Below, in pieces: positions 17,023 to 56,176 of a stretch of 64,000 bases of DNA. Position 1 is the first letter of the stretch. Every line of letters begins with the position of its first letter. The position numbers and the translations under genes are program-made. This DNA is from Diplonema japonicum (Eukaryota; Protista; Euglenozoa: Diplonemea). Where the stretch lies: the NCBI GenBank assembly GCA_964019335.1, contig OZ025698.1:248001-312000 (forward strand), read 5' to 3'. The notes under the pieces are model-generated. The model saw nothing but the letters and a program-made list of their open reading frames with translations. It was not told the origin of the DNA and made no database searches.

Positions 17023-17098
17023 GGGGACCAATGTTTCCAACCTCCCTGTGGTGGTTCCTGGTAATTGTGGTTTGGAGGAACACAAGCGAAAGGGAAAC
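17023..17098 (+). ncRNA. HDV-like self-cleaving ribozyme A (compact)
   Basis: P1 GGGGACC/GGTTCCT (G1.U wobble), P2 GTTTCC/GGAAAC, P3 ACC/GGT closing L3 TCCCTGT, P1.1 GG at 17060-61, P4 TTGTG/CACAA, J4/2 GCGAA with the catalytic-C equivalent at 17087. Confidence 0.85.
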
Positions 17099-17463
17099 TC
17101 TCGTTCTAAAGCCGTACACGTGGGGAAACCTGGGCGGGGGTGGAGAGCCCACCCTACGCGTGGCGCCAGTTAGCATCGCCCTCAACGGAGAGTCCCTTAT
17201 CCCATTACATCGAACAAGGAGGTGGCTTCACCAGGTCAGGCAAGTAGCCTCCCCGCGGCATCGTGCCAGTGAAGCAAGCCTCCCACAACTCTCCAGTTGG
17301 TGTTTAATTGCTTCTGTGGCTCCTCTCCCTATTTCAATTTCCAAGCTTTCTTTACCTCTCCACTTTTACTTTCTACGGGACCACAGGGGACTTGGGAGGC
17401 TTCGGGGCGAAGTTTCACAAGGGTGGCCGCTGTGTCACATACTGGCACCACTAAAATCGAGAC

Positions 17464-17501: not shown

Positions 17502-17640
17502 GGTGGGACAAAACTAAATGTAGAACAGGCCCCTACGTGGCCAAAAGTATAGAATTGTTGCTGACCTCCTCGTGGTACCCACCGGGCAACGGATGAGTGG
17601 AAGTCCCTGCAGTATGCTCATCCGGCGAACTGGCAACAGT
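17502..17640 (+). ncRNA. HDV-like self-cleaving ribozyme B (long J1/2)
   Basis: P1 GGTGGG/CCCACC (7th pair A.A), ~45-nt J1/2, P2 ATTGTTGCTG with (C)TGGCAACAGT, P3 ACC/GGT, L3 TCCTCGT, GGGCAAC, P4 GGATGAGT/GCTCATCC, J4/2 GGCGAA (C at 17626). The core closely resembles HDV CCUCCUCG..GG...GGGCAAC...GGCGAA. Confidence 0.85.
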
Positions 17641-45332: not shown

Positions 45333-45333
<1 letters not shown>

Positions 45334-45470
45334 GTGGTGGGGATAACATGGAAATATAAGAAAAAGATCAGATGTGTTGTTCGCTGTTGACCTCCTCGTC
45401 GGTCATCACCGGTAGCGCCCGAGTGGAAGAACATAATGCAGATGCTCAGGGTGACGAACAGGCAGCAAAC
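45333..45470 (+). ncRNA. HDV-like self-cleaving ribozyme C1
   Basis: P1 GGTGGTG/CATCACC (7 bp), long J1/2, P2 GTTCGCTGTTG with CAGGCAGCAAAC, P3 ACC/GGT, L3 TCCTCGTC, GG for P1.1, P4 GCCC-GAGT/GCTCAGGGT, J4/2 GACGAA (C at 45455). Confidence 0.82.
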
Positions 45471-45654
45471 TGCACGAGCGCAGAATCTTGGTTACCCGGG
45501 ACGCACCGGCTGGGGTTGAGCTGTACACCGCACGCATTAAGGACACGACGCGGAACGCAGAAGAAGCTACAACTCGGCCGCGGTGCGCCCCCTGTAATCA
45601 AGTAGACAGTTCTTGTGCAGGGCGCCGCCAACACCGGCCTCCTTTAACTCATAT
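45333..45654 (+). mobile_element. Ribozyme-headed dispersed repeat C, copy 1
   Basis: ~322 nt; five substitutions relative to 54065-54386; flanked by T-runs. Confidence 0.8.
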
Positions 45655-50740: not shown

Positions 50741-53110
50741 ATGAGGTGTCGATGTGGGTATCTCCTCGGGCTGGTCAGCGACCCTTACGACACGCAGCTG
50801 GAGATGGAAAGGAAAAACGTGTTTATAAGCATCATCTGTATATCGCTGGCATTCGGACTGCCCGGCATGCTGTTCCACTACAACGAGGGTGAAATCGTCC
50901 TGATGTGTTCGACCCTGGCCACGTTCATCGCAGGCTTGGTGGGCATAATTGTGATGATCAAAACACGCAAGCTCAGCATGTGGGTAGTGGTCATGATAGT
51001 GATTACATTTTCAACTGCAGTAGTTTTAGTTGATATCTACGCTGCAGCTAGTTTGAAGGTGAGGCAGTGGCCGCTGTTCGTACCTCTGTGCGATGTGCTC
51101 CTTACTTGCAGATACGACGCGTTGCTGCTGTTCGTAGTGGTTTACGCCTGCTCTACGATAGTGCTGCTAGGTGCTGAGGAGACCTTTCGGTTTGGTCTTT
51201 TTAACCTCTTGGAACAGCCCACTTCCATCTGTGACTGCGCTGACCCGCCCTGCGCGGCGTTTAGTGCTGTACCGAGCGCTACAGGCATTATCTTGGTCTT
51301 CCTCCTCGACTTCCACCTCACTAAGGGTTTCACAACTGCCATGTTTGCTGAGAAGGCTAAAGTGGAGTCTTCCATTGAAACCACGCGTCAGATAGCCGCT
51401 GCCTTAGCCAAGTTCGACTTGGAAACCGCGGAGAAGCACCTCACCGAAGCCACCCTTCCCGGTGACCTTGAGATGGCTTTTAATGACATTCTGGAGAATT
51501 TGCATACCTACCGCCCTTATCTCCCCACCGCCTTGTTCCAGGACACTTCTTCGATGGGGTCGTCTGTCTGTTGTCTCGCCGCGCCTCCTGGTCCTAACGC
51601 GAGCATTGTCTTCACGGACATCAAGGGGTCTACCAACCTGTGGGAGTGCTTTCCCGACGACATGAAGACAGGCCTCGCAACGCATAACAGTGTGATCCGT
51701 TCTTGCATCACCATGTTCAACGGGTACGAGGTGAAGACCATTGGGGACTCTTTCATGGTGGCCTTCGAGTCCATGCTCGACGCCGCGCTTTTTTGCTTAA
51801 ACATACAAGAAGAGCTTTCCAAAGCCAGTTGGCCAGAGGTCCTGTGCAACCAGCAGCTGAGCCCTTCCCTCGGCGACGGCATCGTCGTCAGGGTGGGCAT
51901 GAACTACGGTGACGTCGCTGTTGAGGTCCGTGATGGGAAAACCGACTACTATGGTCCTGTAGTGAACAGAGCCGCAAGACTGGAAGGATGCTGTGTAGGT
52001 GGTGCGGTCGCCATGGAGGAGAGTATTTACACCAAGGTGTGCCAAGAGGCCGAGACAGCAGGCAGAACGGAGCTCAACGACTGCAAATCGCGCAAGGTCG
52101 TGAGGGAGCTGAAGGGCGTGGGCGCGTGCTCCGTAGTAATGATGGTCCCAGGCTCCATGCCGGAACGGGATGTGTACATGAGATTGGAACTGGCAGGGAA
52201 GAATAAAAACCTTACTGCCCCATCGGCAAGAGACAACCCTTTGAGACAGTCGTCATCGAGAGTGTCATACGCAAGTGTGTCGTCAGTGGGCGGCGGTGTG
52301 ACGGGACTGGCAAAACTAGTCCAGTGCAGCGTGGTAAGGGTACAACTACTGGTCACCACGGGCGGGAACGAGTTCACTGCTGCAAGCTGTGCACAGATCG
52401 GGCTGACAAAACTGCTGCAGTGCGCAGAAAGAACAGAGGGCTCTGTCATTGGCTTAACCAGTGCTGCCGTTGATATTGGGTGGAACCTTGCGAAGCCCTG
52501 CGCGAGACACGAAGAAGTCGCTGCACGATTTGCAAACCTTTTCTGCAGCTCCTTGCACAACCTTGCAACTATGCAACATGCCGATAGCAACACGAAGCTC
52601 GCCATCGCCACAGGCAACGTCGTGTCAACAAAACTAGGCACACGAGACCAAAGGTTCATCGCGTGCATGGGACCAACAATAGATCTGTGCTGGCACCTCA
52701 TACAAAGCTGTCTGACCTATCAGGTGGCGTGCGTCGCCGTTTCTATGCTGGAACCCCTGCACTCTTCGAGACTGGCACAAATCCATGACCTACGGCCTTT
52801 GTGTTATTTCCGGATGGCCACGCATGACGACGCCCAGATGGTTCCCGTGTACCAACTAAACATCTCGAAACGGGGGTCGTTGGCCATGTGCCTCACAGAC
52901 TGCACCGATACCGATTGGTTCTGGTCTTCTGAGTACACCGCCGCCTTCTTTGAAGGCAATTGCGACAAGATGAGGCACAAGGCTATAGAGTCCACTTCTG
53001 AGATGACTATAGACATCGTGATGGACACGATGCTGGATCCTATCAATGTGAGAACTTTCGTGCGGCACATCGCATCACCGTCGAGTCCTACAGTGACCCC
53101 GCGTACTTGA
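50741..53110 (+). CDS. Multi-TM class III adenylate cyclase with a degenerate second cyclase-like domain
   Basis: SIVFTDIKGSTNLWE, YEVKTIGDSFM, RVGMNYG and DYYGPVVNRAARLE are euglenozoan receptor-AC catalytic motifs. N-terminal TM helices. Confidence 0.9.
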   Translation: MRCRCGYLLGLVSDPYDTQLEMERKNVFISIICISLAFGLPGMLFHYNEGEIVLMCSTLATFIAGLVGIIVMIKTRKLSMWVVVMIVITFSTAVVLVDIYAAASLKVRQWPLFVPLCDVLLTCRYDALLLFVVVYACSTIVLLGAEETFRFGLFNLLEQPTSICDCADPPCAAFSAVPSATGIILVFLLDFHLTKGFTTAMFAEKAKVESSIETTRQIAAALAKFDLETAEKHLTEATLPGDLEMAFNDILENLHTYRPYLPTALFQDTSSMGSSVCCLAAPPGPNASIVFTDIKGSTNLWECFPDDMKTGLATHNSVIRSCITMFNGYEVKTIGDSFMVAFESMLDAALFCLNIQEELSKASWPEVLCNQQLSPSLGDGIVVRVGMNYGDVAVEVRDGKTDYYGPVVNRAARLEGCCVGGAVAMEESIYTKVCQEAETAGRTELNDCKSRKVVRELKGVGACSVVMMVPGSMPERDVYMRLELAGKNKNLTAPSARDNPLRQSSSRVSYASVSSVGGGVTGLAKLVQCSVVRVQLLVTTGGNEFTAASCAQIGLTKLLQCAERTEGSVIGLTSAAVDIGWNLAKPCARHEEVAARFANLFCSSLHNLATMQHADSNTKLAIATGNVVSTKLGTRDQRFIACMGPTIDLCWHLIQSCLTYQVACVAVSMLEPLHSSRLAQIHDLRPLCYFRMATHDDAQMVPVYQLNISKRGSLAMCLTDCTDTDWFWSSEYTAAFFEGNCDKMRHKAIESTSEMTIDIVMDTMLDPINVRTFVRHIASPSSPTVTPRT

Positions 53111-53168
53111 TAGATCGAGTTTTTTTTTTTTTTTTTTTTTTTTGTTACAAATATTTATCTTTCAAAAA

Positions 53169-53517
53169 ATGATTTTATAACTATATGCAACTGTGCCGAG
53201 CAAAAAACTTTCGCAGCTTTTTAAAAACCTTTTTTGCTCGTGCGAACAACAAAGACATATAGTCATAAAGAATTATTTTTTTTTTTTTTTTTTGGTCGGG
53301 AAAAGTACTCTCCAAACCTGGAGCACTTGGAGGGGTCGCAAGATTAGATCGAAACTGTGAGATCCCTAGTACTGACCATCCCCCCTCCCTTTTTAGGGCA
53401 TGCGGCTTTCGCTTTAGGAGTTTGCATGTTAATTTGAGTTTTTTTTTTTCTTTTATGATTTTATAACTATATGCAACTTGTGCCGAACAACAAAAGACAT
53501 ATAGTCATAAAAGAATT
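53169..53517. repeat. Two copies of a small inverted-repeat element (53169-53274 and 53455-53517)
   Basis: Each copy has tttataactatatg...catatagtcataaa arms; the second is internally shortened. Confidence 0.65.
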
Positions 53518-53948
53518 TCTTTTTGGACCTTTTCATCTACCGAAGATTGAGAAGAACCCGGAATAAACTTTGAACTCACCTTAATTGAAAACATTCACAA
53601 CTAGCCGAGGGGATATCAGCGTGAGTAACCAGCTCTATTATTTTATTTTTTTTGCACCTTTTTAAAAAAAAAAAAAAAGGTGACCACGGTTTGGTACCTG
53701 GCCTGTTGTCTCCCCTGTATCCTCTGATTTTTTTCTTTTTGAAAAACTTAGAATTTGCCATGGTTTGTACCTCCCTTTGAACGCGGCTCTTTAGGACGAC
53801 GCAACTGTTTGAACTGCAGAATACAGTCTAGCGTTGTCGGATAGTGGGCTTTTCTGTGTTTTGCGCGGCATTTGTGATGAATATCTATCATTTTCCCGAG
53901 GATTTTCTCCAGGTTGGGATGGTAGGTTTTTTTTTTTTTTTAAAAAAA

Positions 53949-54055
53949 GGAGTCCAGAAATGGAACATCCGTTAAAATTGGATCGATACAGAGAAGATTA
54001 GCATGTTCCCTGCGCAAGGATGACACGCATTAATCGAGAAAGTATCACCTTTTTT
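53949..54055 (+). ncRNA. U6: U6 snRNA (full length; gene or retrocopy)
   Basis: 5' GGAG..CATCC stem as in kinetoplastid U6, ACAGAGA box, AGC triad, ISL (TGTTCCCTGCGCAAGGATGACA), 3' T6. Confidence 0.95.
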
Positions 54056-54064
54056 AAAAAAAAA

Positions 54065-54202
54065 GGTGGTGGGAATAACATGGAAATATAAGAAAAACAT
54101 CAGATGTGTTGTTCACTGTTGACCTCCTCGTCGGTCATCACCGGTAGCGCCCGAGTGGAAGAACATAATGCAGATGCTCAGGGTGACAAACAGGCAGCAA
54201 AC
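54065..54202 (+). ncRNA. HDV-like self-cleaving ribozyme C2
   Basis: Same fold as C1; catalytic-C equivalent at 54187 retained (GACAAA); one P2 pair lost (G>A). Confidence 0.78.
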
Positions 54203-54386
54203 TGCACGAGCGCAGAATCTTGGTTACCCGGGACGCCCCGGCTGGGGTTGAGCTGTACACCGCACGCATTAAGGACACGACGCGGAACGCAGAAGAAGCT
54301 ACAACTCGGCCGCGGTGCGCCCCCTGTAATCAAGTAGACAGTTCTTGTGCAGGGCGCCGCCAACACCGGCCTCCTTTAACTCATAT
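54065..54386 (+). mobile_element. Ribozyme-headed dispersed repeat C, copy 2
   Basis: ~98% identical to 45333-45654. Confidence 0.8.
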
Positions 54387-54796
54387 TTTTTTTTTTTTTT
54401 TTTTTTTTATTTTTGTTGTTTCTGCAAAGATTTCGGTACCAAACCGTGGGTCACTGTTTTCAAAAATACAAATAAAGCATTAACAAGTGCTCAGAAGTGC
54501 CCTAGTCCGGCGGATTTTGATTTTTTTGTCATTTTAGAGGGTAGTGGGCAGGTTCTTTTTATTTTAGAAAAAAAGATTTCTTCTGAAAAAAAATTTTCCC
54601 CCCCACTTTTACCACGTTTTTAAGGGGTATGTGATTCGACAACCATCCGTTTGGTGCCAAATCCTTTATAATCGTAGGGGTGGTTGGAGTTCTTTTTTAA
54701 GGGCGACTTTTTAGCGAAAAATGGCAAAAGGTGGTCCTTTTTAAGGACCATATGATGGCAAGAAACGGGGAAACGGTTTCGGACACCCCACCATCG

Positions 54797-54903
54797 CTTG
54801 CACCACATGTCGACAACCCGTGATAGGCGCCGATTCAGGCTTGGGCTGTGCCCTGTTCACTCGCCGTTACTAGGAGCATCGCTGTTGCTTTCTCTTCCTG
54901 CGC
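54797..54903 (-). pseudogene. 28S rRNA 5'-region fragment
   Basis: Minus strand GCGCAGGAAGAGAAAGCAACAGCGATGCTCCTAGTAACGGCGAGTGAACAGGG matches conserved LSU GCGGAGGAAAAGAAAC...AGTAACGGCGAGTGAA. Confidence 0.88.
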
Positions 54904-55039
54904 TTTTTATTTTTTTGGGGGGGGGTTTTTCCTTAAGTATCTGAAAAATAAGGAAACAGATACGGAAACGGAAACGTGAGGGTCTACCACTGACCTTGTC
55001 TTACGGCTGACTCCAGTGACGCGCGACATATTTCCCAAC

Positions 55040-55089
55040 GACCTCAGCTGTTGAAGATCTACGCGCTGAACTTATGCATATCACTCAGC
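55040..55089 (+). pseudogene. 28S rRNA extreme 5' fragment (possibly preceded by ITS2 sequence from ~54977)
   Basis: GACCTCAG...CGCTGAACTTATGCATATCACTCAGC matches the LSU start GACCTCAG...CCCGCTGAAYTTAAGCATAT. Confidence 0.8.
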
Positions 55090-55198
55090 CTGGGGGGGGG
55101 GGGGGGGTAATTTGTTTCTTTGGGGAAGATTCTCTTCCTTCATTTGTGGGGGGGTATAATATTCGTCTTTTTCCTCCTCCCCCCCCCCCCCCCCCCCC

Positions 55199-56176
55199 TA
55201 GGGCTATGCTGGCATGGAAACGCGTTTCCATGCATTTTTTGAAAAAAAGGGAAACGGAAACGGAAACGTTTCCCTACTTTGGGGCCGTTTCCTTATTTTT
55301 TTGGGGGCAAATCACTCGGCAGAAATATACGAGACAAAGGGCCAGTGTTGGTGGCGCCCTGGGGAAATCTTCTGGGTTTCGATGAAGGATGCGATTGTGG
55401 CATCCATTTTTTGAACAGCGTCGTCAACCAGCCTTTCGCTCAGAGCTTTCCTGTCCGGTAGCTCGTACGTGGCCCCGAGCGGAAGGCGCTTCACCTTCTC
55501 AAACAGTGCCTTGAATGTTCTGTGAACAGAAAATATGAGAGGACACGAAATAGATAAACATCATACCGATGTTCGACCCTCAAAAATGGGGCCCCAGTTT
55601 CGAGAAAGAAATCCCGAACAGCCCTGTCCACGTCGTCTGGCGTGCTTGTAGCAGTTAAAAATGGCGTCATTGGCCTGTTCCCCACTTTACGCTTCTTCGT
55701 TCTCTCTGCCTCAGCCTTCGCCTCCGCTGTCGCTTTCTCCAACAGCTTCTTGTGGGGCTCCACACTATCCCCTTTGGGGACACACGTCGCTACTCCTTGG
55801 CCTTTTGTTTGGAACAGTGGGCGCGGAGTCTGCTGGTTGACGCTACTGTGAAGACCATATCACAGAAGCGGCATTTTACTGTCTTCTTCTTCCCATCCTC
55901 CGCCTGAACCTCCACCCCATCACAAAGCGCCTTCCAGAGGGTGCTTTCTCTGGACCATGTTTACTTTCGTTTTTGTAGAGACCGACGTGCGCTTTCCTTG
56001 TATACCCCAAAAGTAAGTATCTTCAAAAACCCCAAATAAATAAGGACCTTCTAAACAGTGTTTACCGAAATATACATAGCCGTTTCCATAACCATGGAAA
56101 CGCGTTTCCATGAGAATTTTGAAAACATGGAAACGGAAACGGAAACGTTTCCACGTTTCCTGCCAGCATAGCCCTA
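55199..56176 (-). mobile_element. Internally deleted hAT DNA transposon with a transposase remnant
   Basis: Perfect 16-bp TIRs TAGGGCTATGCTGGCA; subterminal GGAAAC repeats. After removing intron 55520-55566 the minus strand reads DDVDRAVRDFFLETGAPFLRVEHRTFKALFEKVKRLPLGATYELPDRKALSERLVDD (hAT N-terminal region). Confidence 0.85.

What the first reader, a model, noticed from the sequence alone, without database searches (positions are those of the whole stretch)
53926..54386. Full-length U6 snRNA fused directly to a self-cleaving ribozyme element
Seen: T15-A7-[U6 53949-54055]-A9-[ribozyme G1 54065]. The sibling copy reads T-run-AA-[G1], so U6 occupies exactly the slot between the T-run and the element. 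The U6 5' junction (T-run, A-run, GG) mimics the element's own junction. No tRNA gene is recognisable upstream, whereas trypanosomatid U6 depends on a divergent upstream tRNA. Known: U6 commonly ends in a 2',3'-cyclic phosphate, HDV ribozyme products start with 5'-OH, and RtcB ligation of such ends underlies mammalian U6-L1 chimeric retrocopies; R2-type RTs also jump between templates. Inference, three alternatives: (a) a chimeric retrocopy made by ligation or template jumping; (b) the element inserted at the U-tract of a real U6 gene; (c) a U6 copy whose 3' end is generated by the ribozyme. The A9 spacer argues against simple direct ligation.
Basis: partly seen in the sequence, partly recalled or inferred. 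Interest (0 to 1): 0.85.

Follow-up and report, generated by a model that had tools for sequence, protein, structure and literature searches.

The report
Dead U6 copy fused to SINE
A promoter-less copy of the U6 splicing RNA sits directly in front of a short jumping element, most likely because the element's reverse transcriptase reached the end of the element RNA and carried on along a U6 RNA; this is the protist counterpart of the human U6/LINE-1 chimeras and is a by-product, not a working gene.

Summary
Window 53927-54408 reads T15, A7, full-length U6 (53949-54055, Rfam 86.7 bits), A9, a 322-bp element starting at G 54065, then T22.

The U6 is a retrocopy, not a gene. The genome's five other U6 copies are identical to each other, share an upstream promoter block and end in T9-T17. 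This copy has none of that block. Its match to them starts exactly where their U6 sequence starts, it has one substitution, and its T6 is followed by A9.

The element is a young SINE-like retroposon: at least 316 exact heads, copies 98-99% identical, T-rich targets and short target-site duplications. Its first ~134 nt fit an HDV-like ribozyme fold. Its last 15 nt match the 3' end of an APE+RT LINE family with intact 2036-2071-aa frames.

A second chimera, full-length promoter-less U2 joined with no spacer to the same element's G1, and a U2 copy joined to another ribozyme-headed element, show the process recurs. Best reading: one retrotransposition event with an end-to-end template jump. Earlier scan notes report similar U2-LINE and spliced-leader-LINE chimeras elsewhere in this genome.

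This is a known kind of event in a new lineage, of moderate interest.

The parts
53927..53941 (+). Upstream T15 tract: the T-rich target, presumed left copy of the target-site duplication
   Evidence: Normal copies of the element also sit in T-rich sites.
53942..53948 (+). A7 run of extra bases at the 5' junction of the U6 retrocopy
   Evidence: It is not part of any genuine U6 gene flank.
53949..54055 (+). Full-length U6 snRNA retrocopy (pseudogene), ending in T6, with one G-to-T substitution relative to the five gene copies
   Evidence: Rfam RF00026, 86.7 bits. Comparison with L032-L036.
54056..54064 (+). A9 spacer between the U6 U-tract and the element's first base
   Evidence: Only 3 of 316 exact-head copies have five or more A directly before G1.
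54065..54386 (+). 322-bp SINE-like non-autonomous retroposon ('element A'), full length
   Evidence: At least 316 exact heads and 495 tails in the genome. Boundaries and target-site duplications come from 30 copies. This copy has 3 private substitutions.
54065..54198 (+). Predicted HDV-like ribozyme fold. P1 54065-54071 pairs with 54136-54142. P3 54122-54124 pairs with 54133-54135. L3 54125-54132. GG for P1.1 54143-54144. P4 about 54147-54185. Candidate catalytic C 54187. P2 54115-54120 pairs with 54193-54198.
   Evidence: Descriptor scans and shuffle controls. No Rfam hit.
54372..54386 (+). 3'-terminal 15-mer TCCTTTAACTCATAT, shared with the partner LINE family
   Evidence: In 362 kb of held sequence it occurs only at element-A tails and LINE tails.
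54387..54408 (+). Downstream T22 tract: the T-rich target, presumed right copy of the target-site duplication
45333..45654 (+). Sibling copy of element A with the ordinary junction T29-AA-G1
53673..53901 (+). Context only: the upstream flank is a ~230-bp dispersed repeat, not a U6 promoter
   Evidence: 40 matches scored out of 76 candidates; the 39 other than the locus itself are 75-88% identical.

Best explanation
This is a chimeric retrocopy made in one retrotransposition event.

An APE-type LINE reverse transcriptase, from the 2036-2071-aa family whose 3' end element A shares, nicked a T-tract and began target-primed reverse transcription on an element-A RNA. It copied that RNA to its true 5' end, G1. 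That end is most likely set by self-cleavage of the HDV-like ribozyme out of a longer host transcript.

Instead of finishing, the enzyme continued onto the 3' end of a U6 snRNA, copied it to its 5' end, and the cDNA was joined to the upstream T-tract.

The A9 and A7 runs are extra bases laid down at the two template 5' ends. They could be non-templated T added to the cDNA, a short oligo(A) tail on the U6 RNA, or a brief stop on a poly(A) tail. Their origin is not resolved.

The resulting U6 copy has no promoter and is a pseudogene.

Shown: the layout, the retrocopy status of U6, the element family and its LINE-like tail, and the recurrence of such chimeras. Inferred: the single event, the template jump, and ribozyme cleavage.
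For: 1. U6 is a retrocopy. The five other U6 loci are identical to each other, share a roughly 80-bp upstream block and end in T9-T17. The window copy shares nothing upstream, its similarity starts at GGAG, and it has T6 then A9 and one substitution.

2. Element A behaves as a retroposon in this orientation. Its 5' end is fixed at GGTGGTGGG and its tail is ...CTCAT(AT)n. Short target-site duplications are visible (CTATTT, ATTTTA, ATTTTAT), targets are T-rich, and 0-9 extra bases sit at the 5' junction.

3. A partner LINE exists. L055 and L056 end in the same 15-mer plus a T-run, carry Exo_endo_phos and RVT_1 domains, and many copies have intact 2036-aa frames.

4. The process recurs. L068 is a promoter-less full-length U2 whose 3' end ...CTCTTCT abuts G1 of element A with no spacer, with T16 upstream and a T-run downstream. 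L067 is a promoter-less U2 with the same 3' end, followed by one A and a different ribozyme-headed element. The six real U2 genes share a promoter block.

5. No solo retrocopy was seen among the 6 U6 and 11 U2 hits.

6. Divergence is equal in the two halves: 1/107 in U6 and 3/322 private changes in the element, both 0.9%.

7. Runs of five or more A at G1 are rare, 3 of 316. Two such runs at one locus fit one unusual event better than two independent ones.

8. Full-length, sense-oriented U6 placed 5' of the retroelement is the signature of known U6/L1 chimeras (PMC11838501, PMC4476161).
Against: - The target-site duplication is only T-run against T-run, so it cannot prove a single event.
- No empty site or strain polymorphism could be examined.
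- The junction was not verified in reads.
- The A9 spacer has no settled origin.
- Element A targets T-tracts, and a U6 retrocopy would offer one at its 3' end, so a second independent insertion is physically plausible.
- Ribozyme cleavage is predicted, not shown. In this copy the base next to the candidate catalytic C is mutated (GACGAA to GACAAA).
Confidence: 0.62

Rival explanations
1. Two separate insertions. A U6 RNA was first retrocopied alone into the T-tract. Later an element-A copy, which prefers T-tracts, landed in the T-run formed by the U6 U-tail plus the target.
For: Element A inserts in T-rich sites. Ordinary copies occasionally carry long A additions, for example T5-A8-G before G1 in L023. 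The T-run flanks cannot discriminate between one event and two.
Against: No solo U6 or U2 retrocopy was found among 6 U6 and 11 U2 hits. The U2-element A chimera has no T-tract at its junction and no spacer, so that case cannot be a second insertion. This model needs a rare solo retrocopy, exact adjacency, and two independent A-runs of about 1% frequency each. Divergence is equal in both halves.
Confidence: 0.14
2. RNA-level fusion before reverse transcription. The 3' end of U6 (2',3'-cyclic phosphate, or an oligoadenylated form) was ligated, RtcB-style, to the 5'-OH left by ribozyme cleavage. The fused RNA was then retrotransposed as one template.
For: An HDV-type cleavage product would carry a 5'-OH (established chemistry, my own knowledge). 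RNA ligation is one of the two mechanisms proposed for mammalian U6/L1 chimeras (PMC11838501). The zero-spacer U2-G1 junction in L068 is what a ligation would give.
Against: Nine A lie between the U6 U-tract and G1. An A7 run also sits at the U6 5' end, where no ligation is involved, which points to a property of the reverse transcriptase. U2 is not known to end in a cyclic phosphate. No chimeric RNA could be looked for.
Confidence: 0.12
3. A working or exapted U6 gene, transcribed within the host transcript, whose 3' end is cut by the downstream ribozyme.
For: The U6 body is nearly intact at 86.7 bits. It lies on the same strand as all large ORFs in the window.
Against: It has no U6 upstream block. 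Nothing defines its 5' end. Cleavage would leave U6-U6A9, not a normal U6 end. A G that all five genes and the Rfam consensus keep is substituted. It is a single locus. The ribozyme copy is itself mutated.
Confidence: 0.03
4. The assembly wrongly joined a U6 locus to a repeat copy.
For: The element is highly repeated.
Against: The U6 here differs from all five genes and lacks their flanks, so it cannot be a mis-joined gene copy. Public runs from three studies hold 25-73% of the sampled words of 53300-55000. The same architecture is seen at an independent U2 locus.
Confidence: 0.03

Closest known systems
Mammalian U6/LINE-1 chimeric retrocopies (and U1-U5, 5S and U3 chimeras)
   Same: A full-length snRNA lies 5' of the retroelement and in sense orientation. 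It has no snRNA promoter, is inserted at the endonuclease's preferred site, and is thought to form by template switching or RNA ligation (PMC4476161, PMC11838501).
   Different: In mammals the L1 part is 5'-truncated at variable points and carries a poly(A) tail. Here the partner is a complete non-autonomous element joined at its exact first base. Its tail is (AT)n in a T-tract. A-runs sit at both template 5' ends. The host is a euglenozoan protist.
Magnaporthe grisea chimeric retrogenes (WEIRD / Mg-SINE / MGL LINE)
   Same: These are non-mammalian LINE-mediated fusions of a cellular non-coding RNA copy to a SINE or LINE copy, including double template jumps (PMC2104539).
   Different: In the fungus, switching occurs at specific internal sites of the first template. 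Here it occurs at the 5' terminus, and the cellular partner is a spliceosomal snRNA.
HDV-like-ribozyme-headed non-LTR elements: R2 and its non-autonomous derivatives, and L1Tc/NARTc of trypanosomatids
   Same: The ribozyme fold occupies the first bases of the element, so cleavage would release the element RNA from a co-transcript. A short non-autonomous partner shares the LINE's 3' end (PMC3774820, PMC3414825, PMC3383444, PMC4035085). Large J1/2 inserts are known in HDV-like ribozymes (PMC4908430).
   Different: The sequence family is different, with no Pr77 hallmark and no Rfam hit. The element inserts in T-tracts rather than at a fixed rDNA site or with a poly(A) tail. Activity is untested.
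End-to-end template jumping by R2 reverse transcriptase in vitro
   Same: The jump goes from the 5' end of one RNA to the 3' end of another, often after adding a few non-templated bases.
   Different: That work was done in vitro with an RLE-type enzyme. Here the jump is inferred from genomic products of an APE-type LINE.

Membership tests
LINE-mediated snRNA chimeric retrocopy (U6/L1 type) | Full-length snRNA copy, sense-oriented, directly 5' of a retroelement | tested here: met
   U6 at 53949-54055, A9, then element A from 54065, all on the + strand.
LINE-mediated snRNA chimeric retrocopy (U6/L1 type) | The snRNA part lacks the gene's own flanks and promoter, and begins and ends at the RNA termini | tested here: met
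   Five genuine U6 loci share an upstream block and T9-T17. The window copy shares only the 107-nt body.
LINE-mediated snRNA chimeric retrocopy (U6/L1 type) | One target-site duplication brackets the whole chimera | tested here: inconclusive
   T15 upstream and T22 downstream. This is compatible with a duplication, but homopolymers cannot be delimited, and no empty site was available.
LINE-mediated snRNA chimeric retrocopy (U6/L1 type) | The 3' partner carries the 3' end used by an active LINE | tested here: met
   The 15-nt terminal identity with L055/L056 LINE tails, their APE+RT ORFs, and many intact frames.
LINE-mediated snRNA chimeric retrocopy (U6/L1 type) | The phenomenon recurs with other small RNAs | tested here: met
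   U2-element A (L068) and U2-other element (L067). A lead for tRNA-CCA fusions failed.
HDV-like self-cleaving ribozyme | Nested double-pseudoknot core: P1 starting at G1, P3/L3, GG for P1.1, P2, P4, and a C in J4/2 | tested here: met
   All segments can be placed. The descriptor gives 48 hits in 8 families in 362 kb, against 0-1 in ten dinucleotide shuffles and 0 in reversed sequence. P2 and P4 were placed heuristically.
HDV-like self-cleaving ribozyme | Helices supported by compensatory changes between relatives | tested here: met
   P1 differs between families but stays paired: GGTGGTG/CATCACC, GGTGGG/CCCACC, GGGGACC/GGTTCCT, GGGGCT/GGCCCT, GGGGGC/GCCTCT, GGGGTC/GGTCCT. Caveat: full pairing was a search condition, so the independent evidence is the excess over shuffles and the coincidence of G1 with element boundaries.
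HDV-like self-cleaving ribozyme | Match to curated Rfam ribozyme models | tested here: not met
   No ribozyme family appears in 53000-56000 even at E <= 10. The ~44-nt J1/2 insert is a likely reason (inference).
HDV-like self-cleaving ribozyme | Self-cleavage 5' of G1 | not testable with these tools
   This needs an in vitro transcription and cleavage assay or 5'-OH end mapping. Indirect support: cDNA-derived junctions end exactly at G1 in the U6 and U2 chimeras.
Functional U6 snRNA gene | Species-specific upstream promoter block and a long T terminator | tested here: not met
SINE-like non-autonomous non-LTR retroposon | Short, many near-identical copies, target-site duplications, and a 3' end shared with a LINE (whether it is non-coding was not checked) | tested here: met

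The most novel reading that the evidence does not exclude
The ribozyme-cleaved 5'-OH end of the element RNA could be a preferred partner for joining to the 3' ends of abundant nuclear small RNAs, either by an RtcB-type RNA ligase or by obligatory end-to-end jumping of this LINE's reverse transcriptase. The genome would then hold a fossil record of small-RNA 3'-end states, for example an oligoadenylated U6. It would also give in vivo proof that these HDV-like ribozymes cleave at G1 in a lineage where none has been described.
Probability: 0.15. Interest if true: 0.6.

Novelty: new member of a known kind. Interest (0 to 1): 0.35.

Why it matters
This locus shows that snRNA/retroelement chimeras, best known from mammals and one fungus, also arise in a euglenozoan protist with T-tract-seeking, ribozyme-headed LINEs.

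The junctions fall exactly at the predicted ribozyme cleavage site in two independent chimeras, U6 and U2. Because a cDNA can only end where its template ends, this is indirect in vivo evidence that the element RNA really begins at G1.

It has no bearing on U6 function. The locus is a pseudogene.

Tried and rejected
- **Rfam ribozyme families:** at a permissive threshold over 53000-56000, no ribozyme family matched.
- I used the accession RF00026 or the flanks instead.
- **Fetching more genome DNA:** This blocked a full census of 5' junctions and the recovery of empty-site paralogues.
- **Whole-element BLAST against 22 RT loci:** found no partner. The partner emerged only from reading LINE 3' ends.
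- **tRNA-CCA lead:** three heads are preceded by 16 nt that look like tRNA 3' ends plus CCA. The expected T-loop motif at the right distance was absent in all three. None was among the 63 tRNA candidates scored. No held tRNA gene matches them. The lead is not confirmed.
- **The two other copies with A5 or more before G1 (L037, L038):** I recognised no small RNA upstream of either.
- **Alignment for formal pair counting:** the MAFFT alignment of ten ribozymes is out of register by one base in P1' for three families, so I did not use it.

Full report
**Observation.**
- T15 at 53927-53941
- A7 at 53942-53948
- U6 at 53949-54055, ending in T6
- A9 at 54056-54064
- a repeat element from G 54065 to ...CTCATAT at 54386
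- T22 at 54387-54408

Rfam's U6 model matches 53952-54055 end to end at 86.7 bits, against a gathering score of 44. A second copy of the element at 45333-45654 is 98.4% identical and has the ordinary junction T29-AA-G1. ARAGORN finds no tRNA in the window.

**The U6 is a retrocopy.** The genome (62.5 Mb, 132 contigs) holds six U6 copies.
- The other five are identical to one another.
- They share a roughly 80-bp upstream block, for example ...GTTCGGTTTCCACTG...CCCACACCGCAGAAACCCACCTTG...GTCAAGTGTCTATT directly before GGAG.
- They run into T9-T17.
- The window copy shares none of the upstream block.
- Its similarity begins exactly at GGAG.
- It has a G-to-T change (GCATGG to GCATGT) at a G that all five genes and the Rfam consensus keep.
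- Its T6 is followed by A9.

Part of its upstream flank, 53673-53901, belongs to an unrelated ~230-bp dispersed repeat. This rules out an insertion into a real U6 gene.

**The element.** 'Element A' is 322 bp.
- The genome has 316 exact matches to its first 24 nt and 495 matches to its last 24 nt of unique sequence, just before the (AT)n tail, allowing one mismatch.
- The 30 best copies differ from their consensus at 1-5 positions.
- Every copy begins at GGTGGTGGG and ends in ...CTCAT(AT)n.
- Copies sit in T-rich DNA.
- Short target-site duplications can be read in some: CTATTT in L010, ATTTTA in L017, ATTTTAT in L021.
- Extra bases lie before G1, usually one to four, and the base at -1 is A in 23 of 30 copies.

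The element is therefore a retroposon in the + orientation.

Its last 15 nt, TCCTTTAACTCATAT, are identical to the 3' end of a LINE family (L055, L056, and a fragment in L017). In 362 kb of held sequence that 15-mer occurs nowhere else. The L055 frame is 2036 aa, with an APE-type endonuclease domain (633-869) and an RT domain (1231-1443). L056 is 64% identical to it. Many genomic copies keep open frames of 2036 aa. Element A is thus best read as a SINE-like parasite of an active LINE.

**The ribozyme.** No Rfam ribozyme family matches, but the first ~134 nt can be laid out as an HDV-type fold:
- P1: GGTGGTG (54065-71) with CATCACC (54136-42)
- P3: ACC with GGT, around the loop TCCTCGTC
- GG for P1.1
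- a long P4
- a (G/A)CGAA-type J4/2 motif
- P2

A descriptor made of the P3-L3-P3' core, P1', GG, and a fully paired P1 starting with G finds 48 sites in 8 sequence families in the held 362 kb. It finds 0-1 in ten dinucleotide shuffles and 0 in reversed sequence. P1 differs between families yet remains paired: GGTGGG/CCCACC, GGGGACC/GGTTCCT, GGGGCT/GGCCCT, GGGGGC/GCCTCT, GGGGTC/GGTCCT.

Full pairing was a search condition. The independent support is the excess over shuffles and the fact that the P1 start coincides with element boundaries that were defined separately by copy comparison. Cleavage is not shown. In this particular copy the base after the candidate catalytic C is mutated, GACGAA to GACAAA.

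**Recurrence.** A search with the Rfam U2 model found six U2 genes with a common promoter block and the end ...CTCTTCTTTTTT. It also found two promoter-less full-length U2 copies.
- L068 (C28:271593-271794, minus strand) reads T16 | U2 ...CTACTCTTCT | GGTGGTGGGGAT..., which is element A with no spacer, followed by a T-run.
- L067 reads T-rich flank | U2 ...CTCTTCT | A | GGGGGCGG..., a different ribozyme-headed element.

All three snRNA retrocopies I saw are therefore fused to G1 of a ribozyme-headed element, and none stands alone.

Earlier notes of this scan are unchecked AI leads. They report a U2-LINE chimera (probably L067) and a spliced-leader-LINE chimera in this genome. They name the organism as a diplonemid, Diplonema japonicum. 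I did not verify the name.

**Mechanism.** The most economical reading is a single target-primed reverse transcription event:
1. The LINE enzyme nicks a T-tract and primes on an element-A RNA.
2. It copies that RNA to its real 5' end.
3. It continues on the 3' end of a U6 RNA and copies it to its 5' end.
4. The cDNA is joined to the upstream T-tract.

Points in favour, beyond recurrence:
- Divergence is equal in both halves: 1/107 and 3/322.
- Runs of five or more A before G1 are rare, 3 of 316. Two of them in one locus (A7 and A9) fit one unusual event better than two.
- The arrangement matches the published signature of U6/L1 chimeras, with a full-length, sense-oriented snRNA placed 5' of the retroelement (PMC11838501, PMC4476161). 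It also resembles fungal LINE/SINE chimeras (PMC2104539).

The origin of the A-runs is open. They could be non-templated T addition to the cDNA, an oligoadenylated U6, or a short stop on a poly(A) tail.

RNA ligation before reverse transcription remains possible. It fits the zero-spacer U2 junction, but it does not explain A9, nor A7 at the U6 5' end.

Two successive insertions remain possible, because the element likes T-tracts, but that model needs several coincidences.

A functional, ribozyme-processed U6 and an assembly error are both unlikely.

**Limits.**
- As a result there is no read-level confirmation, no empty site, and no full census of junctions.
- A lead that three other heads are fused to tRNA-CCA ends failed its test.

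**Verdict.** This is a dead by-product of retrotransposition: a known kind of event in a new lineage, with a SINE partner. Its main value is that the junctions mark the element RNA's 5' end at the predicted cleavage site.

Noticed in passing
L068 (G000:C28:271593-271794, minus strand, plus the adjacent element head at 271563-271586): A promoter-less, full-length U2 snRNA copy with an internal duplication is fused with no spacer to G1 of element A. It is flanked by T16 upstream and a T-run downstream. It is a second, older snRNA-SINE chimera.
   Followed up: yes
L067 (G000:C82:395031-395223, plus strand): A promoter-less, full-length U2 copy is followed by one A and then a different ribozyme-headed element (GGGGGCGGTATT...). 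This is probably the U2-LINE chimera already noted by the scan.
   Followed up: partly
L071 (G000:C61:450351-450479): A U2 gene with its normal promoter block is cut off after about 57 nt. It then continues into a sequence resembling the 3' tail of element A (TTGTGCAGGGCGCCACCAACAC...).
   Followed up: no
L032-L036 (U6 genes) and L061-L066 (U2 genes): U6 genes carry a B-box-like GGTTCG motif about 85 nt upstream. U2 genes carry GGTTCAATTCC about 115 nt upstream. One U6 gene (L033) has a same-strand tRNA-Asp 124 nt upstream. This may be tRNA-derived promoter material for the snRNA genes.
   Followed up: no
window 53680-53699 and 54435-54454: A 19-20-nt inverted repeat (GGTGACCACGGTTTGGTACC against GGTACCAAACCGTGGGTCAC) brackets the whole chimera. 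The left arm lies at the start of a ~230-bp dispersed repeat (53673-53901; 40 matches scored of 76 candidates, the 39 others 75-88% identical). The chimera may have landed inside a small element with terminal inverted repeats.
   Followed up: partly
window 17023-17112 and 17502-17640: Two further HDV-like folds from different families (P1 GGGGACC/GGTTCCT and GGTGGG/CCCACC) each follow a long T-run. Other first-reader notes cover them.
   Followed up: partly
window 55087-55205: A long, near-perfect hairpin built from a G-run and a C-run (about G16 ... C16). Many microRNA models pick it up well below their thresholds.
   Followed up: no
G000:C85:71964-71998 (minus), G000:C23:717-751 (minus), G000:C11:477334-477368 (plus): Two element-A heads are preceded by A16 and by A14GA, which could be fusions to poly(A) tails. 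One head is preceded by internal element-A sequence (...GAACGCAGAA), which could be an A-to-A jump.
   Followed up: no
G000:C95:257859, C38:262659, C60:276630: Three element-A heads are preceded by 16 nt shaped like tRNA 3' ends plus CCA. The T-loop motif expected upstream was not found, so this stays unexplained.
   Followed up: partly
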